From: Podarcis erhardii
Lineage: Eukaryota
Length of the DNA: 64,000 nt
NCBI GenBank assembly: GCA_964252035.1
Contig: OZ176213.1
Reading direction: 5' to 3' (one strand)
The notes under the pieces were generated by a model. It was not told the origin of the DNA, did no database searches, and saw nothing but the letters and a program-made list of their open reading frames with translations. The first letter of the stretch is position 1, and each line of letters begins with the position of its first letter. Positions 16,144 to 63,880 of this stretch are shown piece by piece. Position numbers and translations under genes: made by a program.

Positions 16144-19100
16144 CTGGGCTGGTTTTGACGCCATTGACGAGGTTCTTGCCAGGGTTGGGGGGACCCGTCT
16201 CTTCTCCATGGGCCTTCAGGGGCTTCTCTCTCTTGGCCAGTGCTGGCTTTGGAGGCCGGTCTGGTGGCTGTTGCTTCAAGGGGGTCGGGGACCATTTCTC
16301 AGGCTTCCGGGCAGGGGAAGAGGACTTGGGCTTGCCCAGCGGCTTCCTCACCCCTTTGTTTTTCTCCTTCAGATCCTTCTTGGATATTTTGTCAGGCCTG
16401 CTCATGTTCTGATCATTGAGCAGCACCTCGGGGTCCATCATGCAGACATCTGGGTGTGGAGGGTGAGGATGGGGGTCCACCAGGGTGATGGGTGGGGGGT
16501 CATGACCAGCTCTTGTGCTGCTGCTGCTGCTGCTGTGATGGGAGCTGCCCACAGCTTTGTCCACTGGGAGGAAATCAGCGTCTTCATCGGAGTCCATGAC
16601 CGCGTCGGCTGTGATGGAGGGGCATTCCTCTGTTTCTGGAGGGACATCCGAGTCAGACTGGGAGGTGCCAGAGTCACTTGCAGAGGTGGGGGGAGTTTCT
16701 TCTGCTGTGGCAGGGGGTTGCCTATGGCCACCAGGGATGGAGTGTGGCCTTCCTTTCACAGAAGGGTGACCTTCAGCCTGGGAACATTCACTCTCCTCTG
16801 ATGAATCCTGAGGACTGGGGTTGATGAACGATGGGGACAGCTCTCCCTTCCTTTGCTTATACTCACACGAGAACCTCTGCCCGTACTCTGAGGTGGCTCC
16901 CAGAGATGGCTCCAACTCATGGGAGGCGTCACCATGATCCTCTGCTTGGCTGCCATGCTGGGCATCTGGAAAGAAGGGCGGGAAAGCTGGCTCACAGCTC
17001 AGCAAGGAAGAGGGACGGCTTTGTCTCTCACAGTCCTCCTTCTCGTCATCCTCCTTCTCATCGTTGTCTTCCTCCTCGTCGTCCTCCTCACTCCTTGTTG
17101 CCCCTGTGAGATGTGGCCCACCATGGAAAGCAAGGGGGCTGAGGCTCACCTCTGTGGGCCCATTGGCAGTGGCAGCTGCCTCCTGCTGGCATTGGGGGGA
17201 AACAGCCAGGATGTCAGGGAGGGGAGTGGCTGCTGGCCACTCTCCAGGGCTTGGGGGCTGCTGTGTGCAGCTAACTGTGCAGCTGGACTCAGACTGCTGA
17301 GTGGGCAGAGAGGGCAGGTCCAAGCTGGCAGAGGCATCTCCTCCCATTTCACCTGAAAACATCTTTGCAGAACCTGCTGGAAGCTGTGGGGATGTGGGTT
17401 GCTGTGCTCTCTGGGCATCTGGCCCAGCAGCTGTTCCTCGATAGGGGGGGAACAAGTGGCTCTCACTGACTGCTGGATGTGTTGAGATGGAGGCCCTCAA
17501 GAAGGTTTCCTCAGGAGAGCTAGATGACTCCCTGTGCAGCTGCTGCTCTTGGGGTGCCCCAGAGAGAAGCTTCCCTCCTCCTGCTGCGAATGATGAATCC
17601 TCATGAGAAACCTTTTTGGATACCTCCAAGTATTCATCTCTCTTGCCCTTTTCAAAGGGGTCAGAATCAGGGATGCCAAAAGCAAGGGATTTGTCCCGTA
17701 AGTGGGATGAGAAATGTGCTTCGTGTCGGAACAGGATGGATGGCTGGTGCATGCCCAGGGAAGAGAGTTCAAAGCCCGAGGAAGAGCAATCCAGCCCTTT
17801 CGTCAGCAGCGCTGGGCCCTTTGGAGGGTCCTTCTCTTTAGCAGCAGAACCAAAGCAGAAGCCTTTGGAGTCGGTATCACCAAAGCCTTTCCCTATGGAG
17901 GCCTCTTCCTCCTCCTCTTCTTCTTCTTCCTCCTCCTCCTCCTCCTCTTCTTCCTCCTCCTCCTCCTTTTTGGAGCATGGCTTGCTTGAGGCCCACTCCT
18001 GCCTTTCTTGACCTGCAAGGCTGCCATAGGCAGCAACATCCTCAGCCTTCAAGGCTGTTCTCTCTTTCTGACTCTCCTCTCCCAACAATGCACCATAGGA
18101 TGCTCCTTGCCATGTCGCTGACAGACAGTCCTCCTTCTCCAGTCCTGAAATGTCTGCATAGGGTTCCTCTTCCCTCTCGCTGGCTGGCTTCAGAGCTGAA
18201 GGGGGCTCCCCTGGGTGCTTGGATTCCTTTTCGGACTTCTCCTTGGCCCCCTTCTCCAGCTCTGAGTCGCTGGCGCTCTCTTCTCCCCTTCTGGCTTGCT
18301 CATAGTACATATCCTTGGGCAGGGAGTGCTTGGGAGAAGGAGACCTTTGCTCCTGGCTGATGTTTGCATCTGGAGGGTGGGCACCTTCAATGTAAAGAGT
18401 TGTCTCCTCCTGCTTCAGCATGCCTGCCACATCAGTGTGGGAGCTAAAGCCTTTGTCCCCCAGAGAGGCTGCAGGCAGGGAGCTCACCAGACTTCCTGGC
18501 AGAAGAGGTGAAGAGTCTGCAAGGCTCTCATCAGGCTGTGGGTTGTCCTGGGCTGTCAAGCTCTGTGGTACACTGGGCTTCTCTGCTATCTGAAGAGGAT
18601 GGCCCTGGGCATGAACCTCTGCATACTCAAAGGAGGGCTCTGCTTTGTCCTTTGGGGAAACTGGAGACGAGAGCTCTTTCTCAGTAGGAGTGTAGAGGCA
18701 AGACTCTTCTTCCTTGGAGGAGATGGGGTAAAGGGTTGTCCCTATCTTGAGACCCACATCTTTTCCAAGGTGGCCAATGCTAGACATGACAACATTCTCA
18801 TAGATATCTGCATAATGGAAAGTCTTCTCATGAGGGTAAGGAGTTGCTTCTCTCTCTTCCCCTTTCCCAAGAGTGTCAACTTTGGGTTCACAGAGCCCAG
18901 ACTGACTGGGAGAGTCTGTGGTGCTGAACCAGGAGTGATGCTCTGCTTGGTCAATGGAGATTGTGTCCTGCAAAGGGGTTGCAAGGTCTCCACTTCCTCC
19001 AAGGTGGGTGGACTCACTCTTCCCTGGCTCCACAACTGCAGGGGCCCTGTCTTCCTGGGATCCTACTGGACTCAGCAGAGCTGCCCTCACAACCTGCTCC

Positions 19101-22100
19101 TTTTGGCTTTCCTCTGAGCAAGTGTGAGATTCCATCTCAGCCTCCTGCTCTCTGTCCTGCATCTCTTTGGGATCCCACTTGCTTTTGTAGACATCATCAC
19201 TCTCTGATCTCCTCTCTGTGGTTCCTGATTGGAGTGTGGGCACACTTTGGTCTACTGCAGGGGACTTTTGCTGCTCTGGTGCAGATGCTTCTCTCTCCTC
19301 TTCCAAAGCAGGAGGCTCCACCACAGAGCTGGACCATGGCTCTGTGGCCACTTCCTCCTCAGCTTGCTCAGGGGGGGACTCCTCCCTCCACCCTGTTGTA
19401 GGCGGAATCTTGACCTGGTGTGGAGGGGACAGTATGGCCCATTCCAGGCCGGATGTTGACACACTTTCTAGCCCAGGAGATGGGGGGCTTTTGGAGCCAG
19501 GCATCTTAGATTCCTTTATGTCCAGGGCACTGTGTTCAGCAGCTGCTTGTGGAAATGCCTGTGTTTGGTCAGATGATGTTTCTGGCACCTGCTGGGCCAC
19601 AACCTTGTCACTCGCATGGGGAAAGTGGTTCTCAGGAGGTGTCTCTTGCTTCAAAGTGGCAAAGTCTTCATGGAAGTGCCTGTATCCTGAGTCCCAAATG
19701 TCTTTCCTGGCCAGTCCAGAAATGTCATCTTCAGACTCTGCCGCAGAGTGAGAAATCACTCCCTCTTCAGTCATGGGAGGAGGAGGAGGAGGAGCCTTTG
19801 TTTCATGTTTTTCTGCTTCCTCATCCAAGAAGGTACATTCCCCTCTTTCTTTCCCATACTTTGGCTTTTGCTCTTTGCATGGCACTTCCTTCATCTCCTC
19901 TGGAAACCACACTTTCTTCTCAGAGTTTGTGTCTTTCAGATAAATATCTTCCATTTCTGGAGATTCCTCCTCCTCCTCCTCCTCCTCCTCTTCAGTATCC
20001 TGCTCCTCTTCCAGCAACTGACGAGGCCCCATCTCCTCAGAGGAGACTTGCGAGGGCTCCTTCTCTAAAACTGGGCTTGGTTCTGTGAAGCTTGAAGACT
20101 TTGAACCTGGACTTTCTTTGGGGGAAGGTCTTGGAGATGGTTCTTTGATAGGCTCTTTTTCAGCTAAGGATACGGCTCTGGCATCTTCCATAATAGTGTC
20201 TGCAGAAGACATCGTGAGGGTGGCATGACTGTCTTGGAATGGATCCTTCCCATGGAATGAAAGGGAACTAAGCGAATTGCCTTTGACCAAAGCTTCAGAT
20301 GTTTTGCTTCCAAAAGGGCTCTGCTCTGTGTAAGACTGGTAGCTCATTTCAGGAGAGAATTGTTCTGTGAACACGTCTGATGAGGACTTCTGAGCAGGGA
20401 CCTCTTTTGTAGACAGAGACTGAGCATCAGGTTGAGAACCCTCTCCTGTGAACAAGTGCAAAGAGGTTTCTTCACTAAGGCTCACAGAAATGTCACTGCC
20501 TTCTGGGGAAGAGTATTTGATAGCAACTGAGGGGGGTCCCTCTTGGCCTAAGTTGCGCTCTGTGAAATGTAGAGCATTCCCATCTTCTGGCAATTTTTCC
20601 ATGGCAATATCATCTGAATATTTTGCTTTCCCAGGAGTGTCTTCAATAAATGGGAACACCTTTGCTTCCTCTGGTGAAAGCGGTTTTGTGGGCGCTTGTG
20701 AAGAACTCTCACCAAAAGCTCTATCGGAAAGTTCCTCCCACCCTTCTGGAGGAGGAATTTCAGCCGCAGAGAAGAGCACCTCATGGGCAGGACACTTCAT
20801 GCTTTCCTGGGAGGCTTGCTCGGTAATGTCTGCTCCCTTCAATGGAGAGCCCTCTTTGGGCTCTAGAAGTGTGTCTTTGGTGAGAGGATAAAGGTCAGAA
20901 ATGTCCAGGGTCTCTTGCTTGTGGTAGAAGCTGATGGCCAGCTCCTCTTTCTCAAGAAGCAGTCTCCGATCCTCACTCTGGACAGGTGCGGATTCTGATG
21001 CAGTCACACTTTCTGGGACAGGCTTGTCCTGAAGGACAGGTGATGCCTCTTTCCCCCCAGAAAAGAGCCCCTCAGTAGCAGCGACCTCTCCTTCAAAAGC
21101 CCTGGAGATCTCAGTGGCTTTGCTGGGACTTCTTTCTTCATCCCATTTCACAGGGGCCTCAGAAGACTTGTCAAACAGCTCAGCCTCCACAGTGTCCGAT
21201 TTCTCCTCTACAGGGGACTGGTGGAAAGGTGTGTGCCCAGCGCTGGTGGGGCCCGACTGGGTGGGAGATGCCATCTTGACTGTGCTGTCATCAGGGCTCA
21301 TGCACCGCTCTTCAGCCTCACCAGAGCCTGCAACTACCTGCAGCAACTGGGCTTCTCCGTCGAGTATCAGCATGGCCTCTTGGGATCCTTCCACTGGCAC
21401 TCCTGTTAAATCATCTCCCAGGGGCCCTTGCTGAGAAAACAAAGGTGCATCATAATGACCCTGCGCTCTCCAAGGCTTCTCAATATTTGGTGTCTCATCT
21501 TCTTCTTCCTCCTCCTCTTCCTCCTCCTCCTGTTCTGGTTCCTGTTGCTGCTGCAGGCCCTTTTTACAGGCCTCAAGCCTCCTCTCACCTTCTGCTTGTA
21601 TACGGAAGTCTTCTGGAGGTGGAGACTTGAAGCCTTTGTCCTCCTCTAGTGAAGATGTGGGAGAAATGGTGCCAGCGGAGGGAACATAGTCCAGACCTTG
21701 GGTAGCCTCTGTTCTAGAGGAAGGAATGCTGTTCACTGTATCCAGCAGCAAGGAGCTTTTGCCAGTATCCTCTGTCTGCGGTGCTGTTATCGAGGCAACA
21801 GACTGGTCCTCTGCAACAGAGGTGGCAAAAGAGGAGAGCTTGTCACACTCTGTGATGGATGTTGCTGAAGAAACATGCTCCTCTTCTGCCAAGGGGGCAG
21901 CCACAATGTTGGTGGGGTAGGCAAGGACTGCAGGGTCTTGGCCAGCAGCTGCCATGGCCTGGATCCCGTGGATAGCTTCAAAGGAGCCAGTCTGGTCTGG
22001 CACCGCAATGTCAGAGGAGCTAATATCTGTCTTGAGCTGGGGCAGCCTCTCCTCCTGCTCATCGTGAATCTCTTCATCGGAGATGGTTTGCTCTGTCTCT

Positions 22101-24496
22101 GAGTAGCCAGGGATGGTCTCATCCTGGATGTAGGAGATGTGTTCTCCAAGTGGGGCTGGAGCGCTGCCCAGGCAGGATTCCTCTTCCTCCCCCTTGCCCA
22201 TTCTTTGCTTCCCAGGCAGTCTGCTTTCCTCCTTGGCCTCTTTTTCCTTCCCTCTGGAGGGAAAGAGGGGACCTTCTGGCTGCTGGAAGAGAGAAGGCTC
22301 ACTTTTCTCTGCCTCTTCCCTTTTGGCCTCTGCAAGGGGCTGTTCAGTCCCTTCCAGCTCTGCCTGTTCCAATCCCTTGTCTCTCCTGTCCATTTGCCTC
22401 TCTGCCTGTGTCTCCATCCACTTCATTTCCAAAGCAGAATATTTGTCTTCCGAGTAATCACCGGAAGCCTGCATTATATCTCTCTCTCCTGCTTCTTTTC
22501 CGGAGACTTCTGCTGTTCTCTCAAGGGGCTCCCCCAAGGTGGCTGCTCTCTCATCAGGTCTTTTGGGCATTTCCCCTCCCCCCTCCTTGCCCGTTTCCTC
22601 CTCTGTTGCACCTTGGGACCAGGAGTCTGGGCCACTGACTCCTTCTGGGATCAGGTCTGTCTCCTGAGCAGCCACATCACTAAGCCCCTGCTTTTCTGCC
22701 TCTCCTTCTGCAGGACCAGGTGCCTCTGGAAGCCCGGCCTGCTTTTCAGCCTTAAGCTCCTCAAAGTCCTTGGTGAGGTCCTCTGGGGAAGACAAGACCA
22801 GCCTGTGCTCAGCCACGCCTGCTGGTTCTGGGGGCTGGCTTGGTGGCTTCCTGGGCACAGGCAAGGCCTTCTTTGGCTCTCCATGGGCAGCGTCCTTCTC
22901 AGCTTTGCTGCGAGCTTTCTCCGCTTTGATCCGACCAGGAGCTTTTGCCTTGTACAAAGTCTTCCTCACTTCAGGGGTGAATGACTTCAAGTCTGGCTTT
23001 GAAATCTTTTTCAGCTCTGGCTTGGCTTCCTTCTTTTTCTCTTCTTTCTTTGACTCCTTCCTTTCCTCTTTCTTCCCATCGTCTTTCTTAATCTCCTTCC
23101 TCTCTTTCTTGATCTCTTTCTTCTCCTTGTCCCTTTTCTCCTCCAACTTAGACACTTTCTCCTTGAGGTGCTTCTTGCCCATTTTGTCCTTGCTGTGTTT
23201 CCTTTTCTCTGCTTTGAGGGCATCGCTGGAGTCCATTCTTACTTTCTCTGCCTTGGGGGGCTTTTCCAGTGGCTCCTTGGCCTTCTTCTCTGTCTTGGCC
23301 TCTTTGAGGACCTCGGACTTCGCCTCCTTTGCTCCCTCCTCACCACTTGCCTTGGCAGCTGCCGGCTTAGAAGACTTGAGGCTTTCCTTGCTGTCTGTCC
23401 TCTGCTTGATCTTGGTCTGCTTGAGTGCCAGGGTGGGAAGGCCAGAGGCAATTTCCTTTTGCGTAGCAACAGGATACTTCAGGAAATCCAAGTGCCTGAG
23501 TTTCTCAAGCCCTTCCAAAATCTTGTTTTGTGGTGCATTCCCAGGGAACAAAACTCGCACTATTTTTTCTGTTGGACTTGCTGGGAGCCACACAACCAAG
23601 GCGGTGATGGAGGTCAGGTAGGGTACAGAGATCTCCCCTTCCTTCCCATTGGCCAGAATGATGCCCGTCTTGGCCTTGCTGTTCCCAGCCCACTTCTGCA
23701 TGAGGAACTGCATCTCCTTGCTCTCCTTGACTGGGTTCAAGACATACATGTCCAGTTTCCCAACACCCATTTTGTGGAACAAGGTGATGGGCTCAATTGT
23801 GTTGCTGACAACCCTGTAAAGGGGCTCTGGCTTCACGCCCAGCCTGTTGAGGTACTGCAGGGTCAGGCTAGCCTCCTCAATGCTTCTCTTGACCTTCATG
23901 GAAGACTCGGGCATTTTGAGCTTCTCAGGGACATTGAAGAAAACCACCCCAAGTTCAGGGGAGATGAGATTCTTCATCCAGTCACTGTAGTTGGTGGAGC
24001 CCTGAGACTGCTCCTCGTCCTGCTCAGCGATCTTCCTCTGCAAGAGACCATTGATGCCAGGGAGGTTATCAGCCCCAATGTGGGTAAGGAGAACAGAGTC
24101 AATTCTGTCCAGGTGCCGCACCAGCTTCCAGAAACAGGACTTCCTCTCTGAACCGCCATCCACCAGGATGTTGAACCCATTGACAGCAAAGAGCGCTGAA
24201 TCCCCCCTCCCTCCAGGGAAGATGTAGCAGCAGGGCTTGGACAGCTTGAGGAAGCCCCCTGAGGTTGGGGGTTCCAAGAGGTCAAAGGGAGATGGGACAT
24301 CCACTGTCTCAGAGACATACTCGGCAAACTCAGAGATCCCATCCATCTCTGGCAGAATTGGGTCAGGGTTCAGTCTCAGACTGAGAAGGTCCTGGAATCG
24401 GGGGTGTCCTAGGTTGCTCCAATCTCCCTCTCCCAAGCACGACACAGTCAGGGAGGCCTTGGAAGCTGGATCTGTGTTGCTGAGAAGCTGGGCAAC
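16144..24496 (-). CDS. MAP1A: MAP1A giant exon 5 (8353 nt; MDGISEF start of short isoform at 24346; KKE basic repeats; acidic/proline-rich middle)
   Basis: 2834-aa ORF with VSETVDVPSPFDLLEPPTSGGFLKLSKPCCYIFPGGRGDSALFAVNGFNILVDGGS matching recalled MAP1A. Acceptor ctcttgtag, donor CCAG|gtaaga. Confidence 0.98.
17903..17965 (-). repeat. MAP1A: Coding GAG/GAA repeat, 21 consecutive Glu in MAP1A
   Basis: 21 CTC/TTC triplets on +, inside exon 5. Confidence 0.95.
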
Positions 24497-25074
24497 CTAC
24501 AAGAGTCAGAAGCAGGCAATAGTCAGAAGCACCACAAAAGGTCCTTGACACCCCCCCCCCCAAATGTCTTTTTTAGTCAAATCCATGCAAGCTCAACTGT
24601 TAACTAGAACTGGAAACCTACCAGTCAACCTATGTAACTAACTATTGTTCTTGGGTGGCCAGAGGTGTCCACCAGATGTATCAATAATAGCATCCTGGAA
24701 ATATGCTACTCTGGAGACTAATAATCTGAAAGGGGCCTCTGCAGGAAATCAAGTGTTTCCCAAGCCTACAATAAGCCAGGAGTTGGAATGCATGGTGAAT
24801 AAAGTTCTGGTAACACATCCTGAATGCCTGGGAAGATTTGTAACGTGTACAACAGTAGTAGCAGCAATCCTCATTTAAGGTGGTCCCAAACTCAGTACCC
24901 CATGACACTGCGGGGTGTTAATCTTAGGCAAAGGATTTTCCAAGACAAGCTGTGAAATAAGACTTAACCTAGGACTAAAAAGAAGACAACAGCCTGAGGA
25001 TGGCCTCCAAAGCCACCTATGTCAGCCAGATTCTTACACATACAAATCCCAGATTCCCCACCCACCCAATTTAC

Positions 25075-25215
25075 CTCTGGATCTGCAAGGATCTCAGCAA
25101 ATTTCTGGTAGGTGAAGGTCCCAGCCTGCAGGATCAAATCTCCTTCTTGGTCTGTGCTCTGTCCACAGAGCACTAGCAGCTTGTAGGCAGAAGGGTCACA
25201 TATCAAGGAACGAAC
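25075..25215 (-). CDS. MAP1A: MAP1A exon 4 (VRSLICDPSAYKLLVLCGQ...ILADPE)
   Basis: 141 nt, the size recalled for the MAP1-family equivalent exon. Canonical AG/GT; homology to SAYKLLILSGQ. Confidence 0.93.
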
Positions 25216-25795
25216 CTGTTTGCAGCAGGAGAGACAGTTTCAGCTCCTGAGTTTTGGACTTGCAGAAATGCTGCCCTCATTCGGATAATGCAGACGGCCA
25301 TGTCTGATGAATGAGCTTGGAGAGGCAGCCCCATTGAGAGGCAGCTTTGCATCTTGCCTAAACATGCTTGAGTCTGGGCTCTAGACACAGCCCCATAATA
25401 TCCCAGTCCTGCCCCAGGCAAGGTCACAGGAGGGGTGGCAGGGAACCCAAATATCCCCACACCTGGTCAGGATAATCTGTGCAGTCAAATTTAGCTGCAG
25501 GCAGAGAGGAAAAGAGGGAAGGCAGCCAGGTCCCTAGAAGTGGGGGAGGGAACTGGGTGCAGTCCTGAACACAGGGCTTTGCGGGAGGGTCTTTGTTTTA
25601 AGGCCTTTATCTACTCCCCTTCATAAATATTTATCCTGACGGGGCAGGAAGATGGTTTCACAAGGGATTTGTAGCTGGTTTGCCCCCAAAGTCAAGAAGC
25701 GGGCAACTTTTGCACCATGCCACTGTAGCAACTCTTAGAGATGTAATTCCATTGGTTACATTGACCCCAGGTAGGCAGGAACCCCAGAGCTTTAC

Positions 25796-25878
25796 CTCTG
25801 ACACAGTGCTCTGTTCATCAGGGTTTACTAGGATGACTGTGTCCAGGTCCTCGCTCTGGTGGTGGAGGGTCCTCTGAC
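25796..25878 (-). CDS. MAP1A: MAP1A exon 3 (GQRTLHHQSEDLDTVILVNPDEQSTVSE)
   Basis: 83 nt. Acceptor ctgtctccctag, donor GAG|gtaaag; homologous to GQRTLCHQSEILETIILVNP. Confidence 0.93.
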
Positions 25879-26645
25879 CTAGGGAGACAGTAGAAAAGGC
25901 TATGTTCAAAACAAGTGCTCATAGTCAGAGCCCAAGGGCAATGCCTTCAGAACCAGGCCATTGTGGCTATCCAGGAGAAGCTGGAAGGGCTGGCAGTTTC
26001 CAAGCTGGCTTCAGGTTTCCCTGCCCTGTTCCCGAGGAAAGTGACCTCCAGTAGAGCAGCCCAGACCAGCTACTTTTGAACTCCCAGCCCAGGGAAGCTG
26101 CAGGAAGATTCCTCGGTGAGTGGCTTCAAACAACAAATGAAAACCAAACTAGACCAATACATTTTGGCACAGGAAGTATTGCTCTGCACAGTTTATGCTA
26201 GCCATTTGGGGGGCTGACTTCAGCTTTCATTGGGACAGAAAGTGATTTGCTTTAGGGCTGAAAAACTGCTCTGGAGTCCTGCAAATTTGAGATGTGTGCT
26301 GATGAGGAAGCTTCTTCCGGCACTGCTGGATATGCAGATGTCTTTGGATGTTCAATGAGCAAGACATAAACATGCCCATAGCATGGATCTTGCAAATGCT
26401 CTCGCTTCGGGCAGCCCCTCCCCGCTCCTCAGAATTGTGCAGGCAGTTGTGAGTTTGGGAAATGAGCAGTGTGTGTGTGTGTGTGTGGTGAGGGTTCCTC
26501 ATGAGCCTGCAGTGATCCTTGCAAAAGAGATGAGCTGCCCAACCCAATACTTTCCCTGGGAGTCTGGGCTCCTGCTGCCGAGTTGTAAAACACTCCATGG
26601 GTTGAGCTCTGTGGCCAATTTAAAATGCATCCATTAAAACACACA

Positions 26646-26646
<1 letters not shown>

Positions 26647-26682
<36 letters not shown>
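26647..26682. repeat. (TG)n microsatellite
   Basis: Directly visible pure TG run. Confidence 0.95.
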
Positions 26683-26685
<3 letters not shown>

Positions 26686-28039
26686 CCCCCCCCCAGGATT
26701 TTGCACTACAGCAGCTGTTCCTGCTTGGCATCCATCGTACAGCAGCTGCTCTGGGCTCCAAGGACTGAGCTGAAGCCATGAGCTGCTCAATTCCCCTCCC
26801 CTCCCTGGCCCTTCCAGCTCTCCGTATTTCTCTATAGATGAAGATGGACAGAGGATTTTGAAAGGAGGGAGGGTGTTCTGGAAATGCTTAAAAGGAGGGA
26901 GGGTGTTCATAATATGATTTTATGACAAAAATCAAGCACACCTTTCATTCTCTAGGGTCAAGCTCTGGAAAAAATGAGTCATGCTCATTGGAAGCATGAG
27001 GCTGCTTTGCCCAGGACTGTGTGACTAGCAACCCAGGTACTCATTAAGAAGTGAATGGATATAAAAACAAATATTCCTCTGAGTCACTAAACAAGGAGGT
27101 TGAGCCAGGCCAAAGCCGAGGACCACTTCTCTCCAAAGGCCTCTGCTTAGGAAACCATCTCCTTCTCTCCCTCTGCTGCATCCCCTTCCTCTTTCCTTTC
27201 AAGGTCTCTTGGGAATGCCCCCTCACTTGCCTTGCAAAGAGGATGCAAAACCTCTTGTCAATATACATTTGCTGAGCAACGGTTCCCCCCACCCCCACTT
27301 AACTTTCTTCTGTTCCCAATTTCAAGGGACCCAGAAAGCGGTGGGAGGGGTGTGGGTGTCTTGCCACTGAACCTGCAGCATTTCATGGATTGCAGGCACC
27401 GCAGAGGAGGATGCTCACCACACTGCCACTGGTCCTCTCCCACTGAAGCCCAGCAGGGAGCATTTCTGGTTGGCCTTGGCCTCTGTGCCTGGTCACCTGC
27501 ACCAACTTCAGACTAAGCCTTCAAGGACATAGCTGGCCACCAGAGAGCACCCTGCCTGCCTCCAACCCTCTGTGGGCCTGCCCAGCTGCTGGCTGCTGCT
27601 GCAGCAATTCATGTCAGTAATCTCTCCCAGGAAAACAAAGCTTGGCTGCTTAGTATTCTGCTTGCATCAGAGGATTTCCTCTGTTCACAGTTGATACTGC
27701 AAGAAGTGGGCAGGGGAAGGAGGCAGGCCAGGCAGGGGCGTGGAGAAGCCACTGGGTCAAGGACAGGTCTCCAGGAGATGGCAGCCTCTTGTTTGCTGGC
27801 CTTCCCACCCACCCACCCCATCTCCCCTCCCCAGCAGATTCCAGAGGCCTCTGCAGAACTCCTGGCTGCTTTCATCATCTCCTGGTACCTGCAGCTTGCA
27901 GCCCATCTCTCCATCTGACAAATGCAAATGAGTTGGCCTGCTTACAAATATGGACCAAACGAGGTTCTCCAATGCCCCAGTAGGCAGAGGAAGCTGTAAA
28001 TGCCTCACAACCTGGTTTCAAGGCTGTCTGTGTAAAGCT

Positions 28040-28830
28040 CCCCTGCAACACCTTTCAGGCCAAAGCTCTTCCAGGCAGCTTGCAAAAGATCTTTAAACCA
28101 TAAAGCAGTTTTTAAAATATAAAGGAAAGAATCCAGTTACAAAAACTAAAAACAGCAGCAGGGTAAAACCCACCTCACCACACTTCTAACAGAATGCAAT
28201 CTGAAACAAGTAAGTTTTAAAGTCTCTTTTTAAAATGAACAAAGATGTGGCCATGCAGACTTCTTTTGAGCAAGAATTCCAAAGATCCGGAGCCACTCCT
28301 AAAAAGGCCTCATCTCTAATGCCTGTTAGCCTGCTGTATCTGGCCACGAGCCTGCAAGGAAGGCTTCTGGGGCCCAGGCAGCTTCATATGCAGGTGGTCC
28401 ATCAAATAAAACCAACATTCAAACCATTTAGGGATGGAAAGGTCCAGATTAGCATTTTAAATTGAGCCCAGAAGCAAATCAGAGCTAAAGGCATCTGGTA
28501 TGTAGTAGTGGTGACTTATTTATTTATATTTTTAAAAAAGTAATTCTAAACTACTTAATATTTCAAAAATCTATAAATAATGTACGTTATATACAATATA
28601 AAAACTAAAATACAGCCAATAAGACAATCTAAACACCTATAAAAGTAAATCAAGCAGAAACTTAGGGGGTTCATACCCATAAAACAGGGTCCAAACCTAT
28701 TGATCAAGGAAAGCCTAGGCTGCTTCTATGCTTTTTTATGCTCTCCTCCACATGCATTCCGTTTCACGTGAAGTCTCTCTAGGCAGCCCCACATGGAGTG
28801 CATTACAGCAGTCTAGTCATCTACTATAAC
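28040..28830 (-). mobile_element. Decayed L2 3' region
   Basis: Reverse complement includes a LDYCNALxVGLP-type motif (gcagccccacatggagtgcattacagcagtctag) and an L2-like 3'UTR. Confidence 0.55.
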
Positions 28831-29989
28831 ATATTCTGCACTGGGGTCCCTTGGAAGAGTTTGATCAACCAATCTAAAGAAATCTAAGGGAACTGGAAAT
28901 CTGACATCTCCTCAATACCCTGCCTGGCCCTTGAGACATGGTCACCAGATCAAGACGTTAGATGGCGCTAGAGCTCTGGACTAAGCTATGCATACTGTGG
29001 CTGGGAGTTCTTTGCATCCTCCCTGCCCATAGTTAAATTTATTGCAAGAAAACCCCAGCCCCACCTCTACTTCTGCCTTCAAACACCCATGCAAATGGGG
29101 GAGGGTTCCACTCTTGCCCTTTGGAGAGGGGGCAGACTAGAAGCTGGGCAAGGAGAAAACCCTTGGCCCTGCAAGTGGGCAGGAACTCCTCTCCTTGTGG
29201 CTGACAATGTGTGCCAGGCCAATGGCTCCAGCAGGGCCAGACAAAGCACAAAGCCATCATCTGTTCTGGATTCCTGCATACCATTCTGATGGCTGCTGGG
29301 ATTTGGCTCTGTGGCCGACCATGTGAAAAAAAAGAGAGTGTTTGACCCTGGAGGGGGGCAGTTTTGCCATCATCCATTCACTTCTTGGCACTGCCCAGAA
29401 ACCTGTGGGGCTCAACTGATGAGCCCCCACTCTTTTTCCAGGAAGATGTCCACTCCTTTTCTGATTCTGCTGGTGGTGGCCTGCTTTTGCAGCAGTTCAC
29501 AGCAACTAGACCTACCTGTAGGATGACCTGTCAGTAGCTGATGGGTCAAAGAGAACTAGAAAAACAAGAGTCACCCACCCCCAAATGCCTAGGAATCTCT
29601 GACTGTGATGGGTGCAGTGATGTCAGCTTTGCAAGGCGGATGGGTGGCACCCACACAGAGGAGGGAGCGCAGACGCAAGGTGGGTGACCTAGTGAGCCTT
29701 CAGGTAATGTTTTGTAGATGGAGCCACTCAACTCCTGCAGTCCCCATCTGACTCATCTCCTTGCATTTGAACAATTCTGATCCTAAAGGAGGGGCTGCAT
29801 CTGGACTAGATTTTTTTAACTTGTTCATTAATAAACTGCTCAGAGAAGTCATGCAAGCTTTGGGGATTTGATGCTACTGAGATGCGGGTGACCCCCAACT
29901 CTATATTTCCTTCCCATCTAAATCCATTCTCCCCCCCAACTCCTACATTAGCATTTGCAGTTAGCATTGGATCAGAAAAGGGCTAACAA

Positions 29990-51942: not shown

Positions 51943-52646
51943 GCACCCCTCCTTCCTCTGTGGGTGCTGCTATGCCCTTGCACAAAGACAGTTCTAGGAG
52001 TGTGCCCTTGGTATCTCAGGTGTGCGGCCAGCCGGATAATGCCAAGCGTCTTTCCATCAAAATCCCCCTTCGTCATCTGTGCCATCTTTGACAATCCACC
52101 TGGTGGAGCTGCATCTATTATATTATTATCGTTCCCTGTTCTAAAGGTGACCGGGCACACGTGACCCCCGCTTTGGGGAGCTTGAGCACTGCTGCCTCCT
52201 GGCGTGCGCTGCTGGCGACCGGGCCTTCAGAGCCAGCTTGGACTCCCATCAGCGTCACCACCCGCGACCATAGACCATTCTCTTGCTTATTTATATTCAG
52301 GCCTGGCATTGGAAGCGGGGAGGTGGAGCTTTCCGCGAGCCCCGCCCCCTCTCTGGCCTTGGCCGGGGCATGTGGCGCCGCGTTGTCACGGCAACCCCCG
52401 CGCAGCGCGGAACGCGTGGGGGCGGGGCCTGCAGCGTGGCCGGCCGGAGCCGCCGCGCGAACGCCCGAGGGGGCGGGGCAAGGCGTTCTTCTCGCGCGTG
52501 CGCTCGCTCCCCGCCTTTTTTTTTTTTTTTTTTGCCTGTGCGCGCGCGCTCGCTCGCTCGCCTCTGTGTCTGTTGGGGGAGGATTCGCAGCTCACGCGAC
52601 CCCCCGTCCTCCCCTCCGAGAGGCCTCCTTCTCCGCCTGGCGCAGG

Positions 52647-53035
52647 ATGGACCCCGCGGGGAGCCCGCTGGACTTGGGCTTCTGCCCGTCGGCGCCCTGC
52701 CTGCTGGTGGAGGACTCGCAGCCGGAGCCGGACTCCGCCCAGGACGACGGCGAGGAGCCGCAGGCCCTGCCCGGCCTGAAGAGGAGGTGGCGGGGACCAG
52801 GGGCGGAGGACGAGACGGATGGGCCGCGGGTCGTTCCGGGAGCGAAGGCGGCGGGAGGAGGCCCGGAGGAGGAGCAGCAGGAGGAGGGCCGGGGCGCTGA
52901 GGGGGCTGAGCGGGGTCCCGCAGGGGGCTCTGGGCCCGCTCCCTTGCCGCCTTCGCTCCCGGCCTCCGACTCGCCGCGCGCCCTCCTCAGCCAGGTCTTG
53001 GAGCAGCTGCCGCCGCCGCTCGCCAGGAACACCAG
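52647..53035 (+). CDS. TP53BP1: TP53BP1 first coding exon (MDPAGSPLDLGFCPSAPCLLVEDSQP...LSQVLEQLP)
   Basis: Matches recalled 53BP1 MDPTGSQLD...PCLIIEDSQP and SQVIEQLP. Donor CCAG|gtgggc, phase 2. Confidence 0.85.
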
Positions 53036-58573: not shown

Positions 58574-59729
58574 GACACTTTCCTCCCAACTCCAAGCTTA
58601 GAGAAAGGGCCTGAGGCACAGACAGAGAAAGGAGATGATTGTGGTATCAGTTTGCCAGCAGACAGCTCTGAAGTCCCTGAGGCACCTGCATCTGTTGTGG
58701 AGGGCCCCTTGTCATGGCCCTCGGGTGAGGCCTGCCTATTGGCGCTGTCTGCTAGTGAGTGCAGCCAGTCCACTGAGGCTGTGCAGCCTGAGGAAACAGC
58801 CATGGAAGCTCATGGTCCTCCAGTGGAGAAGCTTGGCTTGGATGGTAGATGTAGCGAGCAGCAGCGGTTTAATGAGGACAGCCATGCCTCAACTGGGCAG
58901 CCTGCAGGAAGAGGTTCCACTGCCCAAGTTGGAGTTGGAGATGACCTTGCAAGTCAGGGCCATCTCTTGTGCCAGGGGTCTCAGGAGCCAGAATGTGAAG
59001 CTGTCCCAGAAACGCCTGGTGAAGCGCAAGGAGAAGCTGAGCTGCTGAGGGATGGAAGTTCTTGCCTTCACTCGACTCACTCTCAGGAAGAAAAGGTGGA
59101 CCAGCATGTGGAACCTGCTGCAGCCAGAGAAGACTCTGAGAATGTGCTCCAGGCAGCTGGAGAGCCTGCACACCCAGATCCAGGAAACTTAAAAGAAGAC
59201 CCCTTGGAAGACTCCAAGGAGGAGGCTTCCCTGAGGATCGGCTCTGGGGTGACACTGAAGCTCTCTGACTCCCAACCAGAGCTGGAGGGAAGCAGGTCCC
59301 AGGGGAGGTCCAATGTTGCCCCTGGAGTGGGGCTGCCTGCTGCCATCTCTCCAGGCAGAAGCAACTTGGGAAGTGTGCTGGAGGAGGAGGAGAGCTTGCC
59401 ACTGCTGCCACCCCAGGGGGAAGGGAGCGGAGTGCCAACAACAGCCAAGGAGGATGAAACTGCAGAGAGCCAAGCAGCAGCAGCACCTCCAGAGCAAGGC
59501 AGGAGGAAGTCTGCTGCCCTTCCAGGGAGCCCATCAGTTACTGCAAGGGAAGATTCAGAGCTGGGACCCTTGCCTGGGAAGGAGAAAGCACCAGCAGTGA
59601 CTTTGGAAGAGGGATCCCATCCTGGGAGTGCAGAGGACCAGAGGGAGATCCAGCAGAAGCCATGTGGGCTGGAGAGAGAGGTGCAGCTGTGCCAGAGGGG
59701 TCCTGAGCCACCTGCTAGCCTGCCCAGCG
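58574..59729 (+). CDS. TP53BP1: TP53BP1 large exon (DTFLPTPSLE...VPETP...; 1156 nt)
   Basis: Starts like DIFIPSPSLE; contains LALSASECSQS and AVPETPGE motifs. Acceptor ttttag, donor AGCG|gtaagt. Confidence 0.92.
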
Positions 59730-60838
59730 GTAAGTGGTTCTGGAGAGTAAGAGCAGCAGTAGAATTGCATCATTGGAAAGCATCCCTGTGGAGTGACCCA
59801 GGCTGCCTAGGCTTGAGCCAATGTGGCTGAGAGAGAAAGGAGAGTAGCCTTTTGCAGCTTAAGAAGATAATTTCTCTTGCCCCCTCCTCTCCCTATCCCT
59901 CTGCTCTATTGTGTGAGGTCTTTCCTTGAAATACTCTCTAGTGGTTGCCAAAGGGCATGATACACATAGACTGAGATGGAGGCTGTTCCCTTCCTGCCTC
60001 TGTGCCTGTCTGGTGTGTGAAGGGTGCATTGCATCTGTTCTCACAGAGGCTGCATTGGCCTGTTGGCTTTTAAATGCCACCTTATTTATTGCTTATTAAG
60101 TACATATGTGGACTGCCTAATAGCCAGAGCTCTCTGGGCAGTTCACAGAAGAGAAATGGAAGTACAGGCATAATTCAAATCAGCTCAGACTCCTTTGCAG
60201 CTGCAGTGAGAGCCTTCCAGGCTGTTGGAACAGCATTCTAGTGCTCTCTGTGGCTTGATGACTGGCAAGGTCTCACCCTCCACCCTGCTATCTTTCAGCA
60301 GTTACTGTTATCTATTTTCGGTGATTACATTGTTAGAGAAGCACAGCGTGTTCTGTAAGTGCCTGTCTAGAGTACAATATGTTTAGCGTAGGTGGGAGGA
60401 GCTGGGATGTTTGTGCACTGGGGACTTGGGCTTTGCTCTGCCCATGGTTTCAACCTTCTGGACTAGAAGCTAACCCCCCCCCCAAAAAAAACCCCACAAC
60501 AACATAAAACAGACTTCTCCAGTATCTGTGCCTTGTACCAGCCTCTATGCAGCACATGGCAGGAAGTAAGAGGCCTGGGCACAGGATTTGCAAAGGAATC
60601 TTCTTGCCTAGTCTCACTCTCTGGAATTATTGTTAAAACAGTGTTTATGGAAGACAATCTTACTCGGCTACGAGTGATCACCAAAGAAGATGATCTTGCC
60701 TGGTAGTGTGATGCCATGCTGTTTTCTTCCAGTTGGGGCCCTTGGCTGACCATTTAGCTGCCGAGAATTTGTGGCAAGGAGGGTGCCTAGTAGCAGAATG
60801 TGAGCTTACCACCTGTCTGTTGTAATACCTTGTTCCAG

Positions 60839-60958
60839 GAACCCCCTTTCATCTCGCCCTGCTGAAGGAGAAGCATGTGATTGAGCCTCTGACAGGCATC
60901 ACACCACCTCACATTGGCCAGCTGAAGAAAGGCCCCAGGCGACACAGCACTCCTATTG
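60839..60958 (+). CDS. TP53BP1: TP53BP1 exon (TPFHLALLKE...TPPHIGQLKKGPRRHSTPI)
   Basis: Matches TPFHFTLPKE...KRHSTPIG; 120 nt; canonical sites. Confidence 0.92.
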
Positions 60959-61795
60959 GTGAGTAGGAGACGTGGGGTGGGGTTTCTGTGAGTGATAGAG
61001 ATGGGCACCAGCTGCCTTCCAGCCTTCCCAAAGTGGCCATCTTTCGTCCTTCTCTTTGCCTTCAGAAGGTGTGTGTGCTGGTGGAGAGCAAGGAGGGGAC
61101 TGATCCAAGAAGCCATCAGTATAGCAAAACCCCAGTGGGAGGGAGGCCCCGTGGTAGCTGTTTACATATTGCCAGAATGGTGTGAGCCTGGAAGATATGA
61201 CCTTACATTGTGCCATATTGCCTGTTCATTTTGCTCTATTGTCATATCTGACTGGCAGCAGCTGGGGCTTCAAGTGTGAAGAGGATCTCACAGCACCAGC
61301 TGACTGATCCCTCTAACTGGAGGGACTGCTAGGGATTGAACCTGGGACCTTGTGCATACAAAGCAAGTGCTCTGCCACTTCCTCTGCCATTTGGAAGCAG
61401 CTACAGACCACAAAGGGAATGACAGACTCTGCCCTTGGAGCAGCTGAGAAGTGTGGACAGTTGCTGTCTACACTGTTATAATCTGAAGCAAATCTGGATG
61501 CAGCTCCAACTGCTGCTGTGGCTTCCTCCACAGAATTCCAGAAGGTGCAAGGTTTCAAGGGCCCAAATTCTTCTTGGCTCCCTTGCAGAAGTACAATCCA
61601 CATAGCTTGGATTGGGAGCCCAGCTCATTCAGTCTCTTTCTGATATTAGAGCAGTTGGCCCAAGGGCTAAGGCATATTCTGGTGCTGCAGAGCTGCGATC
61701 TGCTTGGGGGTGGCCAAGAGGCTTTCTGTGCTGGTTCTTTCCAGTAAGCCTGGGTGGCTGTTGGTGAACCTGCCATCTTGCTTTGCTTGTTTCAG

Positions 61796-62020
61796 AGGCT
61801 GGAAACTGCCCAGACAATACCATAGCAACCAGCGATGTCACAGCTGAGGGCACCAACAATGTGACAGTGGAGAGTGCTCTGACCTCTGTTGAGATGGAGG
61901 AGAGTGGCAAAGGGAGCGCTGAGGCCGCCTGTGAGGAGCAGGGGAAGCTGTCCTTGCGCATGAACCTTGTGACCCCTGTGACGGAAGAGAGTGACGAGTC
62001 CCTGCCCTTCAGCCTGGACA
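61796..62020 (+). CDS. TP53BP1: TP53BP1 exon (NCPDNTIATSDV...KLSLRMNLVTP...ESLPFSLD)
   Basis: Matches STIATSDV and KLCLRMKLVSP...ESLQFNLE. Donor GACA|gtaaga. Confidence 0.92.
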
Positions 62021-62031
62021 GTAAGAGATTC

Positions 62032-62555
62032 CTTTATGCCACTACAGCCGCAAGAATTATGTTGGCACAAAACTGGAAAACGGAAACTATACCTAGCATA
62101 AGCGATTGGCAGGTTAAAATGGTAAATTATGCCAAGCTTGCTAGACTAACAGGTAGAATACAAGACCAAGATGAACAGAAATTTCATAAAAATTGGAATA
62201 AATATTGGAAGTATATTGGAAACAATTTGTAGAGGGCACTGGCGGTGTTGGAATAACTCTAACAATGAGTGGCTAATATTTAAGATCAAAAATAAAATAC
62301 GTGACTGTAGAATTTATTTGATACTTACCAAAAGGGTGGAGGGGAGTCCAAGGCTCGGTAGAGCCCAAATATTGTGATTTTTAGATTTTTTGGTCTTTTC
62401 TTTTTGTATAATTGGGGGAGGGAATATGATAAACTATGTAAATGAACTATACTTATATTTATATGTATACTGATATGTTTATTTGTGTATTTTATATCTA
62501 CATTGATATGTTTAGTTGCATAGCTTGAATAAAAATGTATTGGATAAAAAAAAAA
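62032..62555 (+). mobile_element. 5'-truncated L1-clade LINE (ORF2 C-terminus + 3'UTR + polyA), TSD AGAGATTC
   Basis: Encodes FLYATTAARIMLAQNWK...DWQVKMVNYAKLARLT, recalled as the squamate L1 ORF2 end. AATAAA 62528-62533, A10 62546-62555; AGAGATTC at 62024-62031 and 62557-62564. Confidence 0.85.
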
Positions 62556-62866
62556 GAGAGATTCAGTGCAAGAGCAGTTGCGGAGCGATGGTCCCCTGCC
62601 CTGGACTAGTGACTCCAAACAGTACTGACTACTTGACTAGCAGTCTTTATAGTTCTCATGATTCCATCTCTTCCTGGGAAGGGCTGATTTGGCAGTGCTG
62701 TTGGAAACACTTGCAGAAACCTGGCCCTTTAGGCAAGGAAGAGGTGGTCCTTGTCCTGGGCAAGTTGTGAAGAAAATGGCAAGGCTTTCTAACTGGGTGG
62801 TGACTTTTGATCCAAAGTGTTTGGGAGGGGGTGGAATGCTTCTAATGCCTTCCTCTTTGCCCCCAG

Positions 62867-62918
62867 AGCCCACATCCAGTGAAAAGAAGAACGGGTCTGT
62901 CACAGGAGTTGTTTCCAG
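62867..62918 (+). CDS. TP53BP1: TP53BP1 small exon (PTSSEKKNGSVTGVVS)
   Basis: Homologous to PATGERKNGSTAV; phase 1 to 2; donor CAG|gtaata. Confidence 0.85.
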
Positions 62919-63406
62919 GTAATAGGCAGGTACTGGTACTTAAGCCCTTTGTGACAGAGCTGAATGGCATCTGCTGGGAAAGGGGGGGGGGTGTGCTTAT
63001 GTGCCATCCTCCTGCCATCCAGTTTAGGCCCAACTGGGCCAGACTGACAGTATCTCTAGGGCTGCTTTCATCAGTTTTCCCCATGCGTGGGTGAACTGCC
63101 CATGTCAGAGAGGGCTGAGCCCCAGAAAGGTATTTGGAGGGGCAGGAAAACGTGTCTTGCTCCCTCTATCCTTCCAGATACTCGTAGCTGCTGCTAGGGA
63201 GGTGAAGGATGTTGGTATTTAATGGCATCTGAGGGGTTTTCTGAACTAGAGGTCCTTGTGGGTGCTTGAGGCCCCAGCATTCTGGAGCAGTTTCTGGGGC
63301 CACCAAATACTGGCCAGGTTGCCTCACTGCTAGCAGCTCATAGGCCTTAGCTATTTCTTTGGCAGGATTGAAACTTTCTGAGCCTGTCTCTCTCTTCTGC
63401 CTATAG

Positions 63407-63502
63407 CTCCCGGAAGGTGCCATCCGTCTTCACTCGAGTCTGTGAAGTACAGCGTGAAGAAGACAAGGCTCAACGCCCTGAGCTGCCTTGTCCACTATTC
63501 AG
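63407..63502 (+). CDS. TP53BP1: TP53BP1 exon (SRKVPSVFTRVCEVQREE...) with GC donor
   Basis: Homologous to SVLSCICEARQE. Donor CAG|gcaagt; phase fits the next exon. Confidence 0.8.
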
Positions 63503-63880
63503 GCAAGTCCATGGAAGGCTTCCCTGGTGCTGTCTCTAGGGCTGTCTCTGCACAACTTCCCTTCCACATGAACTAATAACTCATCCCAGTGTGGGAATGT
63601 TCAGGGATGCAGGAGAGGATATATTGTGTGATTATATCCTTATCCAACTTGTGTTAACAAGTTCCCAATATCAGCAGAGTAAAAACATTCCCCTTTATCT
63701 TAAGTTTGCAACGGTAGCGTCTGCTCAGGTTCTAGCGAAGGGAGAACTTTGCCTTTGTATCTGCTTCTGGGTTCCCTAGGAACATCTGACTTGCCCCTGC
63801 TGGTAACAGAAGACGAGATTTGGATACACATTCATTGTGATCTGGCAGAGCTCCTCTCATGCTTTTCTGATTGCTTTCAG

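What the first reader, a model, noticed from the sequence alone, without database searches (positions are those of the whole stretch)
61796..62564. L1 inserted into a TP53BP1 5' splice site, in frame with the exon and carrying its own poly(A) signal
Seen: a 5'-truncated L1 with 8-bp TSD AGAGATTC (62024-62031 / 62557-62564) sits only a few bases into the intron after donor GACA|gtaaga. Reading through the donor, the 53BP1 frame continues without a stop into the L1 ORF2 C-terminal peptide (SLD-SKR-FLYATTAARIMLAQNWK...GNNL*, stop ending 62232). AATAAA (62528) and A10 follow. Inference: if this donor, which is weak on the exonic side, is skipped, an intronically polyadenylated chimeric 53BP1-L1 transcript results. 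With a terminal exon and no downstream junction it would be expected to escape NMD. Established: 53BP1 oligomerisation, Tudor, UDR and BRCT domains are C-terminal, while the S/T-Q docking motifs for PTIP/RIF1 are N-terminal. The product would keep the effector-binding region but lack break targeting, a possible TE-made truncated isoform or a young polymorphic allele affecting NHEJ/HR balance.
Basis: partly seen in the sequence, partly recalled or inferred. Interest (0 to 1): 0.75.

Follow-up and report, generated by a model that had tools for sequence, protein, structure and literature searches.

The report
Young L1 beside a 53BP1 splice donor
One lizard lineage carries a recent 525-base LINE-1 fragment 11 bases past a splice donor of the DNA-repair gene TP53BP1; it is real and absent from two sister taxa, but whether it makes a shortened 53BP1 could not be tested because no RNA from the carrier was available.

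Summary
The sequence observation holds. A 225-nt TP53BP1 exon (61796-62020) ends in the donor ACA|GTAAGA. A sense-oriented, 5'-truncated L1 3' end follows from intron position +12 (62032-62545), then an A10 tail and a perfect 8-bp target-site duplication. Reading through the donor gives an open frame into the last 66 codons of L1 ORF2, with the stop at 62230-62232. AATAAA lies at 62528.

New here: contigs from two other organisms, about 1% diverged, cross a precise empty site (533 nt absent, 8 nt ambiguous). The insertion is therefore young and lineage-specific. Only one sample, of the carrier organism, holds it.

Two corrections. The L1 is beside the 5' splice site, not in it: positions -3 to +11 are unchanged.

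The functional claim is untested. No RNA run of the carrier was found. RNA-like contigs from a relative that probably lacks the insertion show normal splicing. The poly(A) site has a good upstream context but a U-poor downstream region and sits in a short intron.

Most likely this is a near-neutral or mildly harmful intronic insertion with, at most, minor aberrant transcripts. It is a known kind of event, and interest is modest.

The parts
60839..60958 (+). Upstream TP53BP1 exon (120 nt)
   Evidence: RNA-like contig X15 record 9 joins 60957/8 to 61795/6 across a GT..AG intron. Sequence read.
61796..62020 (+). TP53BP1 exon, 225 nt, phase 1 at both ends (75 codons); skipping it would stay in frame
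   Evidence: Orthologous exon fragments P0005-P0019. Orthologous contig L001 has 53-BP1_Tudor exons about 7 kb downstream. Spliced on both sides in X15. Phases computed.
62018..62028 (+). 5' splice site ACA|GTAAGAGA, unchanged by the insertion; weak U1 complementarity
   Evidence: U1 duplex -4.5 kcal/mol against -7.4 to -10.3 for three RNA-supported neighbouring donors. The A|GTAAGAG core is kept in L001 and in the read-through fragments P0005-P0019.
62024..62031 (+). Left copy of the 8-bp target-site duplication AGAGATTC; its last 4 nt (62028-62031) are microhomology with the L1
   Evidence: family D8. joint 62023>62557 with 'both' = 8. table 7: X4 loose ends of other L1 copies start matching at 62028.
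62032..62232 (+). Last 66 codons of L1 ORF2 plus the stop codon, in frame with the exon
   Evidence: 73-77% identity to ORF2 C-terminal fragments P0001-P0004. Aligns to residues 1201-1264 of the 1265-aa P0170. P0170 matches human LINE-1 ORF2p at E 3e-170.
62233..62545 (+). L1 3' UTR, AT-rich, with AATAAA at 62291 and 62528
   Evidence: 78.5% nucleotide identity over 332 bp to the L1 3' end in L003.
62122..62127 (+). Cryptic donor ATG|GTAAAT inside the L1; its use would add 101 nt to the exon and shift the frame
   Evidence: (U1 duplex -5.3 kcal/mol, slightly better than the native donor). Use not shown.
62528..62533 (+). L1 poly(A) signal AATAAA, ending 12 nt before the tail starts
   Evidence: Context: three UGUA motifs and 47% T in the 100 nt upstream, but only 18% T in the 50 nt after the tail.
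62546..62556 (+). A10 tail plus one extra G
62557..62564 (+). Right copy of the target-site duplication AGAGATTC
   Evidence: family D8. table 5.
62867..62918 (+). Next TP53BP1 exon (52 nt)
   Evidence: X15 joints 62020>62867 and 62916/8>63405/7. The junction codon A+AG encodes K.

Best explanation
This is a recent retrotransposition event. A 5'-truncated L1 copy was inserted in sense orientation by target-primed reverse transcription. It comprises the last 66 ORF2 codons, the 3' UTR and an A10 tail. It sits 11 nt downstream of an old, weakly U1-complementary but constitutively used TP53BP1 donor, in one lizard lineage only. The insertion made an 8-bp duplication and used 4 nt of microhomology at its 5' end. 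It lengthened a 313-nt intron to 846 nt and left donor positions -3 to +11 unchanged.

Inferred, not shown: the intron is still removed from most transcripts, so the gene works normally. The L1 adds at most minor by-products: read-through ending at the L1 poly(A) site, use of the cryptic donor at 62122, or some skipping of the exon. The in-frame continuation into ORF2 is a coincidence. The insertion is nearly neutral or mildly deleterious.
For: Structure:
- Searches show the exon, donor, duplication, tail, poly(A) signal and GC break.

L1 identity:
- ORF2 C-terminal relatives at 73-77% identity, one with a Cys/His knuckle.
- 1645 relatives. A long one (P0161, 1268 aa) has Exo_endo_phos plus RVT_1, and the match lies at its C-terminus.
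- the tail aligns to the end of an Anolis protein that matches human ORF2p structures at E 3e-170.

TP53BP1 identity:
- 53-BP1_Tudor exons lie downstream on the orthologous contig.

Recency:
- X4 and X5 each have a single contig crossing a precise empty site. Their flanks differ from the window by 21/2235 and 26/2294 letters.
- only three runs, all from one sample of organism A, hold more than 0.7 of the words. Seven other genome-size organism labels hold 0.35-0.51, which is about the non-L1 share of 0.47.

Insert present in reads:
- X1 contigs cross both junctions with 0 mismatches, and X1 shows no empty-site joint.

For mostly normal splicing:
- The core donor is untouched.
- The same weak donor is conserved in distant relatives and is spliced in X15 RNA-like contigs.
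- The intron is still short, and the region after the tail is U-poor.
- Predicted donor accessibility does not change consistently between the filled and empty alleles.
- Splicing competes with and represses intronic poly(A) sites (PMC13322065). Introns that switch to intronic polyadenylation tend to be long and GC-poor (PMC8501991).
Against: No RNA from the carrier was available, so 'mostly spliced' is an inference.

- The donor pairs with U1 through only 5 bp (-4.5 kcal/mol), and 22% of all GT sites in the gene region do as well or better. It must therefore depend on auxiliary context, and that context is replaced by AT-rich L1 sequence from +12 onward.
- The L1 brings three AATAAA hexamers and a UGUA/U-rich upstream context.
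- It also brings a cryptic donor slightly stronger than the native one.
- In mammals, LINEs within 50-100 bp of exons are depleted, and known mutagenic intronic L1s are mostly sense-oriented (PMC3088655).
- An L1 195 nt downstream of an NF1 exon caused exon skipping (PMC3219598).
Confidence: 0.6

Rival explanations
1. In carriers a substantial fraction of transcripts fail to use the weak donor and are cleaved and polyadenylated at the L1 signal (62528). The result is an NMD-immune mRNA for the N-terminal part of 53BP1 plus a 70-residue SKRF-ORF2 tail. It would lack the oligomerisation, Tudor, UDR and BRCT regions, so the allele would be a hypomorph or a modifier of repair-pathway choice.
For: - The frame is open to 62232.
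- The donor is weak.
- A canonical AATAAA has UGUA and U-rich sequence upstream, and it evidently worked in the source element, since the tail starts 12 nt after it.
- The Tudor exons lie downstream of this exon.
- L1-derived poly(A) sites and L1-induced intron retention or cryptic polyadenylation are documented in human genes (PMC2553571, PMC3192792).
- Weakened donors do activate intronic poly(A) sites (PMC8501991).
Against: - There is no RNA evidence at all.
- The donor core is unchanged.
- The downstream element is U-poor (18% T).
- The intron is short, with its acceptor only about 310 nt past the site.
- The product would lack the 53BP1 nuclear localisation signal, which lies between the UDR and the BRCT repeats in human 53BP1 (established knowledge, not tested here). 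Nuclear competition for RIF1/PTIP is therefore doubtful.
- The carrier sample appears homozygous.
Confidence: 0.2
2. The insertion mainly disturbs exon definition. This could be partial skipping of the 225-nt exon, which is in frame and removes 75 residues of the disordered N-terminal region. It could also be use of the cryptic L1 donor at 62122, which adds 101 nt and shifts the frame, so the transcript would probably be degraded. Either way the dose of full-length 53BP1 would fall.
For: - The exon is symmetric, and the skip junction G+AG stays in frame.
- The cryptic donor ATG|GTAAAT has a U1 duplex of -5.3 against -4.5 kcal/mol for the native one.
- An intronic L1 195 nt downstream of an NF1 exon caused skipping plus a cryptic exon (PMC3219598).
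- The insert lies inside the mammalian LINE under-representation zone (PMC3088655).
Against: - No RNA from a carrier.
- The native donor comes first and sits next to the exon's own enhancers.
- GTAAAT lacks the +5 G.
Confidence: 0.15
3. The insert is an assembly artefact, or a somatic or single-read event, and not a germline allele.
For: All the runs that hold it (X1-X3) come from one sample, which may be the sample the genome was assembled from.
Against: Short-read contigs cross both junctions without mismatch, at the same depth as the flanks (13.9 and 15.2). The insert has the full signature of retrotransposition: tail, 8-bp duplication and microhomology. It also matches the empty site in X4/X5 to the base.
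Confidence: 0.02

Closest known systems
Intronic sense-oriented L1 insertions that cause intron retention, exonization or cryptic/premature polyadenylation of the host gene (Kaer et al. 2011, PMC3192792; TE-derived poly(A) sites, Lee et al. 2008, PMC2553571)
   Same: A sense L1 3' end carrying its own AATAAA lies inside an intron of an expressed gene, close to the upstream exon. The proposed outcome (read-through ending at the L1 signal) is the one described there.
   Different: Those cases rest on transcripts. Here no transcript from a carrier was seen. The element is a 525-bp fragment without a promoter, so interference from L1-driven transcription does not apply. The host is a lizard, not a mammal.
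Disease-causing or polymorphic L1/Alu insertions near splice sites (NF1 series, PMC3219598; 'hazardous zones', PMC3088655)
   Same: The insertion lies within the 50-100 bp LINE under-representation zone next to an exon, is sense-oriented, and is very young.
   Different: Most known mutagenic cases lie near acceptors or inside exons. This one is 11 nt past a donor and leaves the consensus intact. No phenotype or splicing defect is shown.
Intronic polyadenylation isoforms of DNA-repair and tumour-suppressor genes (cited in PMC13322065; PMC8501991; PMC6465371)
   Same: The concept is the same: a truncated, NMD-immune protein made from an intronic poly(A) site in a long repair gene.
   Different: Those sites are usually in long, GC-poor introns or are unmasked by donor mutation or CDK12/U1 inhibition. 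Here the intron is 846 nt and the donor is unchanged. A paper search for TP53BP1 with intronic polyadenylation gave only two papers, each naming TP53BP1 once and not opened.
   Same: Same genome, and a young L1 fragment landing at an exon-intron boundary of a conserved gene without destroying it.
   Different: In that case the duplication rebuilt the acceptor. Here the donor was simply missed by 11 nt. I did not re-test that note.

Membership tests
LINE-1 (L1 clade non-LTR retrotransposon), 5'-truncated copy | Coding sequence homologous to the L1 ORF2p C-terminus | tested here: met
   The 66-aa tail is 73-77% identical to ORF2-tail fragments, one of which has the Cys/His knuckle. It aligns to residues 1201-1264 of the 1265-aa P0170 (E 5e-7). 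P0170 matches human LINE-1 ORF2p chains 8sxt/8uw3 over residues 24-1236 at E 3e-170, far better than it matches R2 proteins (1e-26).
LINE-1 (L1 clade non-LTR retrotransposon), 5'-truncated copy | Relatives encode an APE-type endonuclease plus reverse transcriptase in one ORF of about 1270 aa | tested here: met
   P0161 (1268 aa) has Exo_endo_phos at 7-230 and RVT_1 at 524-779, and the tail match lies at 1125-1263. The copy in the window is truncated and has neither domain.
LINE-1 (L1 clade non-LTR retrotransposon), 5'-truncated copy | Signature of target-primed reverse transcription: 3' poly(A) tail, flanking target-site duplication, precise empty site | tested here: met
   A10 tail, an 8-bp perfect duplication, and an empty site in X4 and X5 with 8 ambiguous letters.
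LINE-1 (L1 clade non-LTR retrotransposon), 5'-truncated copy | Endonuclease nick at a TTTT/AA-like site | tested here: inconclusive
   The inferred bottom-strand nick is 5'-TCTCT/TAC-3', read. It is pyrimidine-rich but only loosely like the consensus. The extra G at 62556 blurs the exact position.
TP53BP1 (53BP1) gene | The exon lies in one transcription unit with 53BP1 Tudor-domain exons | tested here: met
   The orthologous exon (P0006, 56% identity) sits on contig L001, where called products 7.3-7.8 kb downstream hit PF09038 53-BP1_Tudor. The Tudor exons of this genome lie beyond the window's end, according to earlier scan notes that I did not re-test.
TP53BP1 (53BP1) gene | The exon is expressed and spliced at the stated boundaries | tested here: met
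   X15 contig record 9 (2180 nt) joins 60958>61796 and 62020>62867. This is in a relative (organism I), not in the carrier.
TE-derived intronic polyadenylation isoform | Transcripts that read from the exon into the TE and end at its poly(A) site | not testable with these tools
   No RNA run of organism A was listed, and the run search and the read-laying run are each capped at one. No protein in the 5.8-billion collection covers both halves of the chimera (best query cover 64%), but lacertid contigs seem absent from that collection, so this says little.
TE-derived intronic polyadenylation isoform | Functional poly(A) signal context: hexamer, upstream UGUA/U-rich sequence, downstream GU/U-rich sequence | tested here: inconclusive
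   The hexamer and upstream elements are present. The downstream 50 nt are only 18% T, with 8 GT/TG dinucleotides. No trained predictor was available.

The most novel reading that the evidence does not exclude
In the carrier lineage the L1 poly(A) site captures a large share of TP53BP1 transcripts. Animals homozygous for the insertion would then make mostly an N-terminal 53BP1 fragment with an L1 ORF2-derived tail, lacking the oligomerisation, Tudor, UDR, NLS and BRCT regions. That would be a natural, TE-made strong hypomorph or a separation-of-function allele of a central DNA double-strand-break repair factor, segregating or fixed in a wild vertebrate.
Probability: 0.06. Interest if true: 0.65.

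Novelty: new member of a known kind. Interest (0 to 1): 0.3.

Why it matters
If the insertion changed TP53BP1 output, it would be a natural allele of a key regulator of the choice between end joining and homologous recombination. It could then be studied by comparing very close relatives with and without it.

As the evidence stands, it is mainly three things:
- a clean, datable example of a young L1 landing inside the zone next to an exon that selection normally keeps free of LINEs;
- a presence/absence marker that separates organism A from at least two sister taxa;
- a ready-made test of how much a weak but intact donor protects against an L1 poly(A) signal about 500 nt downstream.

Tried and rejected
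- **Pfam on the tail and the exon peptide.** Nothing meaningful: only MCM_bind at E 0.008, below its cut-off.
- **Pfam on the 213-aa upstream product of L003 and on P0004.** No family.
- **Source names of the long relatives.** Unhelpful or wrong (host-gene names, or 'reverse transcriptase domain-containing'). L1 membership was therefore settled through the solved human ORF2p structures instead.
- **Other copies of the element in the window.** None.
- **Run search for RNA.** It returned no RNA run of the carrier. The RNA-like runs belong to organisms I and J, and the one that was laid probably lacks the insert.
- **Donor accessibility by partition-function folding of the filled and empty alleles.** The sign changed with the flank length, so I rejected this as evidence either way.
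- **Strong cryptic acceptor inside the L1.** A scan for an AG after at least 15/20 pyrimidines found none, so an alternative-last-exon route is not supported.
- **ARAGORN on the high-copy repeat at 61314-61407.** No tRNA found.
- **Findings search by five words.** Nothing returned.
- **First paper searches.** Two failed on term format.
- I built no joined exon model of the chimeric protein and no L1 family consensus (see referred steps).

Full report
**What is in the sequence**

- A 225-nt exon runs from 61796 (after tttcag) to 62020 and is followed by gtaagagattc.
- From 62032 the composition changes sharply: GC is 31-35% against about 53% in the flanks.
- The AT-rich block ends in AATAAA (62528), A10 (62546-62555), one G, and then AGAGATTC (62557-62564). 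That octamer repeats 62024-62031 (family D8).
- Translating from the exon through the donor gives an open frame of 70 further codons, SKRF plus 66 codons, ending at the stop 62230-62232.
- The other two frames close after 26 and 0 codons.
- The allele without the insert would read 18 codons into the intron before a stop.

**The exon belongs to TP53BP1**

A word search with the 144-aa read-through peptide found 15 short products from other species that match the exon half at 51-66% identity. One of them (P0006) lies on a 12-kb contig (L001). On that contig, called products 7.3-7.8 kb downstream hit Pfam 53-BP1_Tudor.

RNA-like contigs of run X15 join 60958 to 61796, 62020 to 62867 and 62918 to 63407 across GT..AG introns. 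This fixes the exon boundaries. It also corrects the next exon's start to 62867, so the intron is 846 nt.

Earlier notes of this scan place the UDR and BRCT parts of 53BP1 5-8 kb beyond the window's end. I did not re-test them.

**The insert is an L1**

- The tail half of the query matched four fragments at 73-77% identity. One of them (P0004) extends upstream into a Cys/His knuckle.
- A full HMMER scan with P0004 found 1645 relatives.
- The long relatives carry RVT_1. One of 1268 aa (P0161) also has Exo_endo_phos at its N-terminus and the match at its very C-terminus.
- The window's 66 residues align to residues 1201-1264 of a 1265-aa Anolis protein, P0170.
- That protein matches the solved human LINE-1 ORF2p structures over almost its whole length at E 3e-170. 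R2 proteins reach only about 1e-26.
- With the poly(A) tail and the duplication, this meets the L1 definition.
- The copy is 5'-truncated to 525 bp and has no enzymatic domain.
- Loose ends of other L1 copies begin to match at 62028 (table 7). The last four letters of the duplication (ATTC) are therefore shared with the L1, which is the microhomology typical of 5'-truncated insertions.
- Summed contig depth over the L1 body is 10-200 times that of the flanks in three genomes, mostly at 90-95% likeness. The family is abundant.

**The insert is young and lineage-specific**

This is the main new result.
- Of 14 genome-size runs, only X1-X3 hold 0.71-0.83 of the sampled words. All three come from one sample of organism A.
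- Runs of seven other organism labels hold 0.35-0.51, close to the 0.47 that the non-L1 part makes up.
- When contigs were laid, X4 (organism B) and X5 (organism C) each gave one contig of about 1.7 kb. It runs to 62023, resumes at 62557, skips 533 nt, and has 8 letters that fit either side. This is a precise empty site (tables 5 and 8).
- Their flanks differ from the window by 21/2235 and 26/2294 letters, about 1%.
- In X1, contigs cross both junctions without a mismatch (60750-62057 and 62504-63550), and there is no empty-site joint. The sample looks homozygous, but it may be the assembly's own source and is not independent.
- A perfect duplication, a pure A10 tail and an uninterrupted 66-codon ORF2 remnant fit a recent event.
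- Whether it is fixed or polymorphic in organism A is unknown.

**The donor**

The L1 did not insert into the splice site. Positions -3 to +11 are identical in the filled and empty alleles.

- Only GUAAG pairs with the 5' end of U1: -4.5 kcal/mol, against -7.4 to -10.3 for three RNA-supported neighbouring donors.
- 22% of all GT dinucleotides in the gene region do as well or better.
- The same A|GTAAGAG donor is present in L001 and in the read-through fragments from about 15 other sources. It is an old, constitutively used site that must rely on its context.
- From +12 onward that context is now L1 sequence.
- Folding gave no consistent change in donor accessibility.

**What the L1 brings**

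- Three AATAAA hexamers, at 62197, 62291 and 62528.
- The last one has three UGUA motifs and 47% T in the 100 nt upstream. The 50 nt after the tail are only 18% T. The site has a good upstream half and a poor downstream half.
- A cryptic donor, ATG|GTAAAT, at 62122. Its U1 duplex (-5.3 kcal/mol) is slightly better than the native one. Using it would add 101 nt and shift the frame.
- No convincing cryptic acceptor.
- The exon is symmetric, so skipping it would delete 75 residues in frame.

**The functional claim**

The chimeric, intronically polyadenylated transcript could not be tested.
- No RNA run of the carrier was listed.
- The laid RNA-like run comes from organism I. Its low-depth unspliced contig stops matching exactly at 62557, with 5 letters to spare, so that animal probably has the empty site.
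- That run shows that the donor is normally used. It says nothing about carriers.

Literature supports the possibility:
- L1 is the transposable-element family most often associated with human poly(A) sites (PMC2553571).
- LINEs are depleted within 50-100 bp of exons (PMC3088655).
- An L1 195 nt past an NF1 exon caused skipping (PMC3219598).

Literature also limits it:
- Splicing and 3' processing compete, and intact splicing represses intronic sites (PMC13322065).
- Introns that switch to polyadenylation after donor damage are longer and GC-poorer than those that are merely retained (PMC8501991).
- Here the donor core is intact, and the acceptor lies about 310 nt beyond the poly(A) site.

It would also lack the nuclear localisation signal, which argues against a nuclear dominant-negative role. 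The in-frame junction is a 1-in-3 coincidence with no shown consequence.

**Verdict**

The insertion is real, it is L1, it is in TP53BP1, and it is absent from two taxa about 1% diverged.

My weights for the consequences are:
- about 0.6 for a near-neutral or mildly harmful insertion that is spliced out of most transcripts;
- about 0.2 for a substantial polyadenylated chimera;
- about 0.15 for exon skipping or cryptic-donor use as the main effect;
- about 0.02 for an artefact.

This is a new instance of a well-known kind of event, and interest is modest until carrier RNA is examined.

Noticed in passing
window 61314-61407: Very high-copy repeat. Summed contig depth is 18,000-29,000 against about 14-24 in the flanks, in three genomes. 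A tRNA-like T-arm motif is visible on the minus strand, but ARAGORN calls no tRNA. It is probably a SINE fragment in the upstream intron. X4 and X5 show a 69-nt skip at 61263-61333 next to it.
   Followed up: partly
window 63503-63880: This TP53BP1 intron appears to be a GC-AG intron. The RNA-like contig X15 record 14 ends at 63503 and continues with letters found at 63881, giving the donor CAG|GCAAGT.
   Followed up: partly
window 62982-62992: All three DNA runs, including the likely source sample X1, have 2 fewer letters in the intronic G10 run (table 4). The homopolymer length in the assembly may be off by two.
   Followed up: no
window 62734-62791: Organism B (X4) replaces 58 nt of this intron with 8 other letters (tables 5 and 5c). 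This is a second structural difference between the close taxa.
   Followed up: no
window 15941-24445 (minus strand): An uninterrupted 2834-aa ORF, rich in KE/EE repeats, that looks like MAP1A by eye. It lies upstream of TP53BP1 on the opposite strand. Not tested.
   Followed up: no
window about 52600-52800 and 58652-59830: The likely first coding exon of TP53BP1 (begins MDPAGSPLD, contains LLVEDSQPE) and a large exon inside a 392-aa ORF. The gene is compact here: about 9.4 kb from the start codon to the exon of the finding.
   Followed up: no
L003 (Logan contig of ERR13998647): A related L1 3' end in another organism, with 78.5% nucleotide identity over 332 bp that include part of the 3' UTR. 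Its ORF2 is split into two called products (3-644 and 663-1118).
   Followed up: partly
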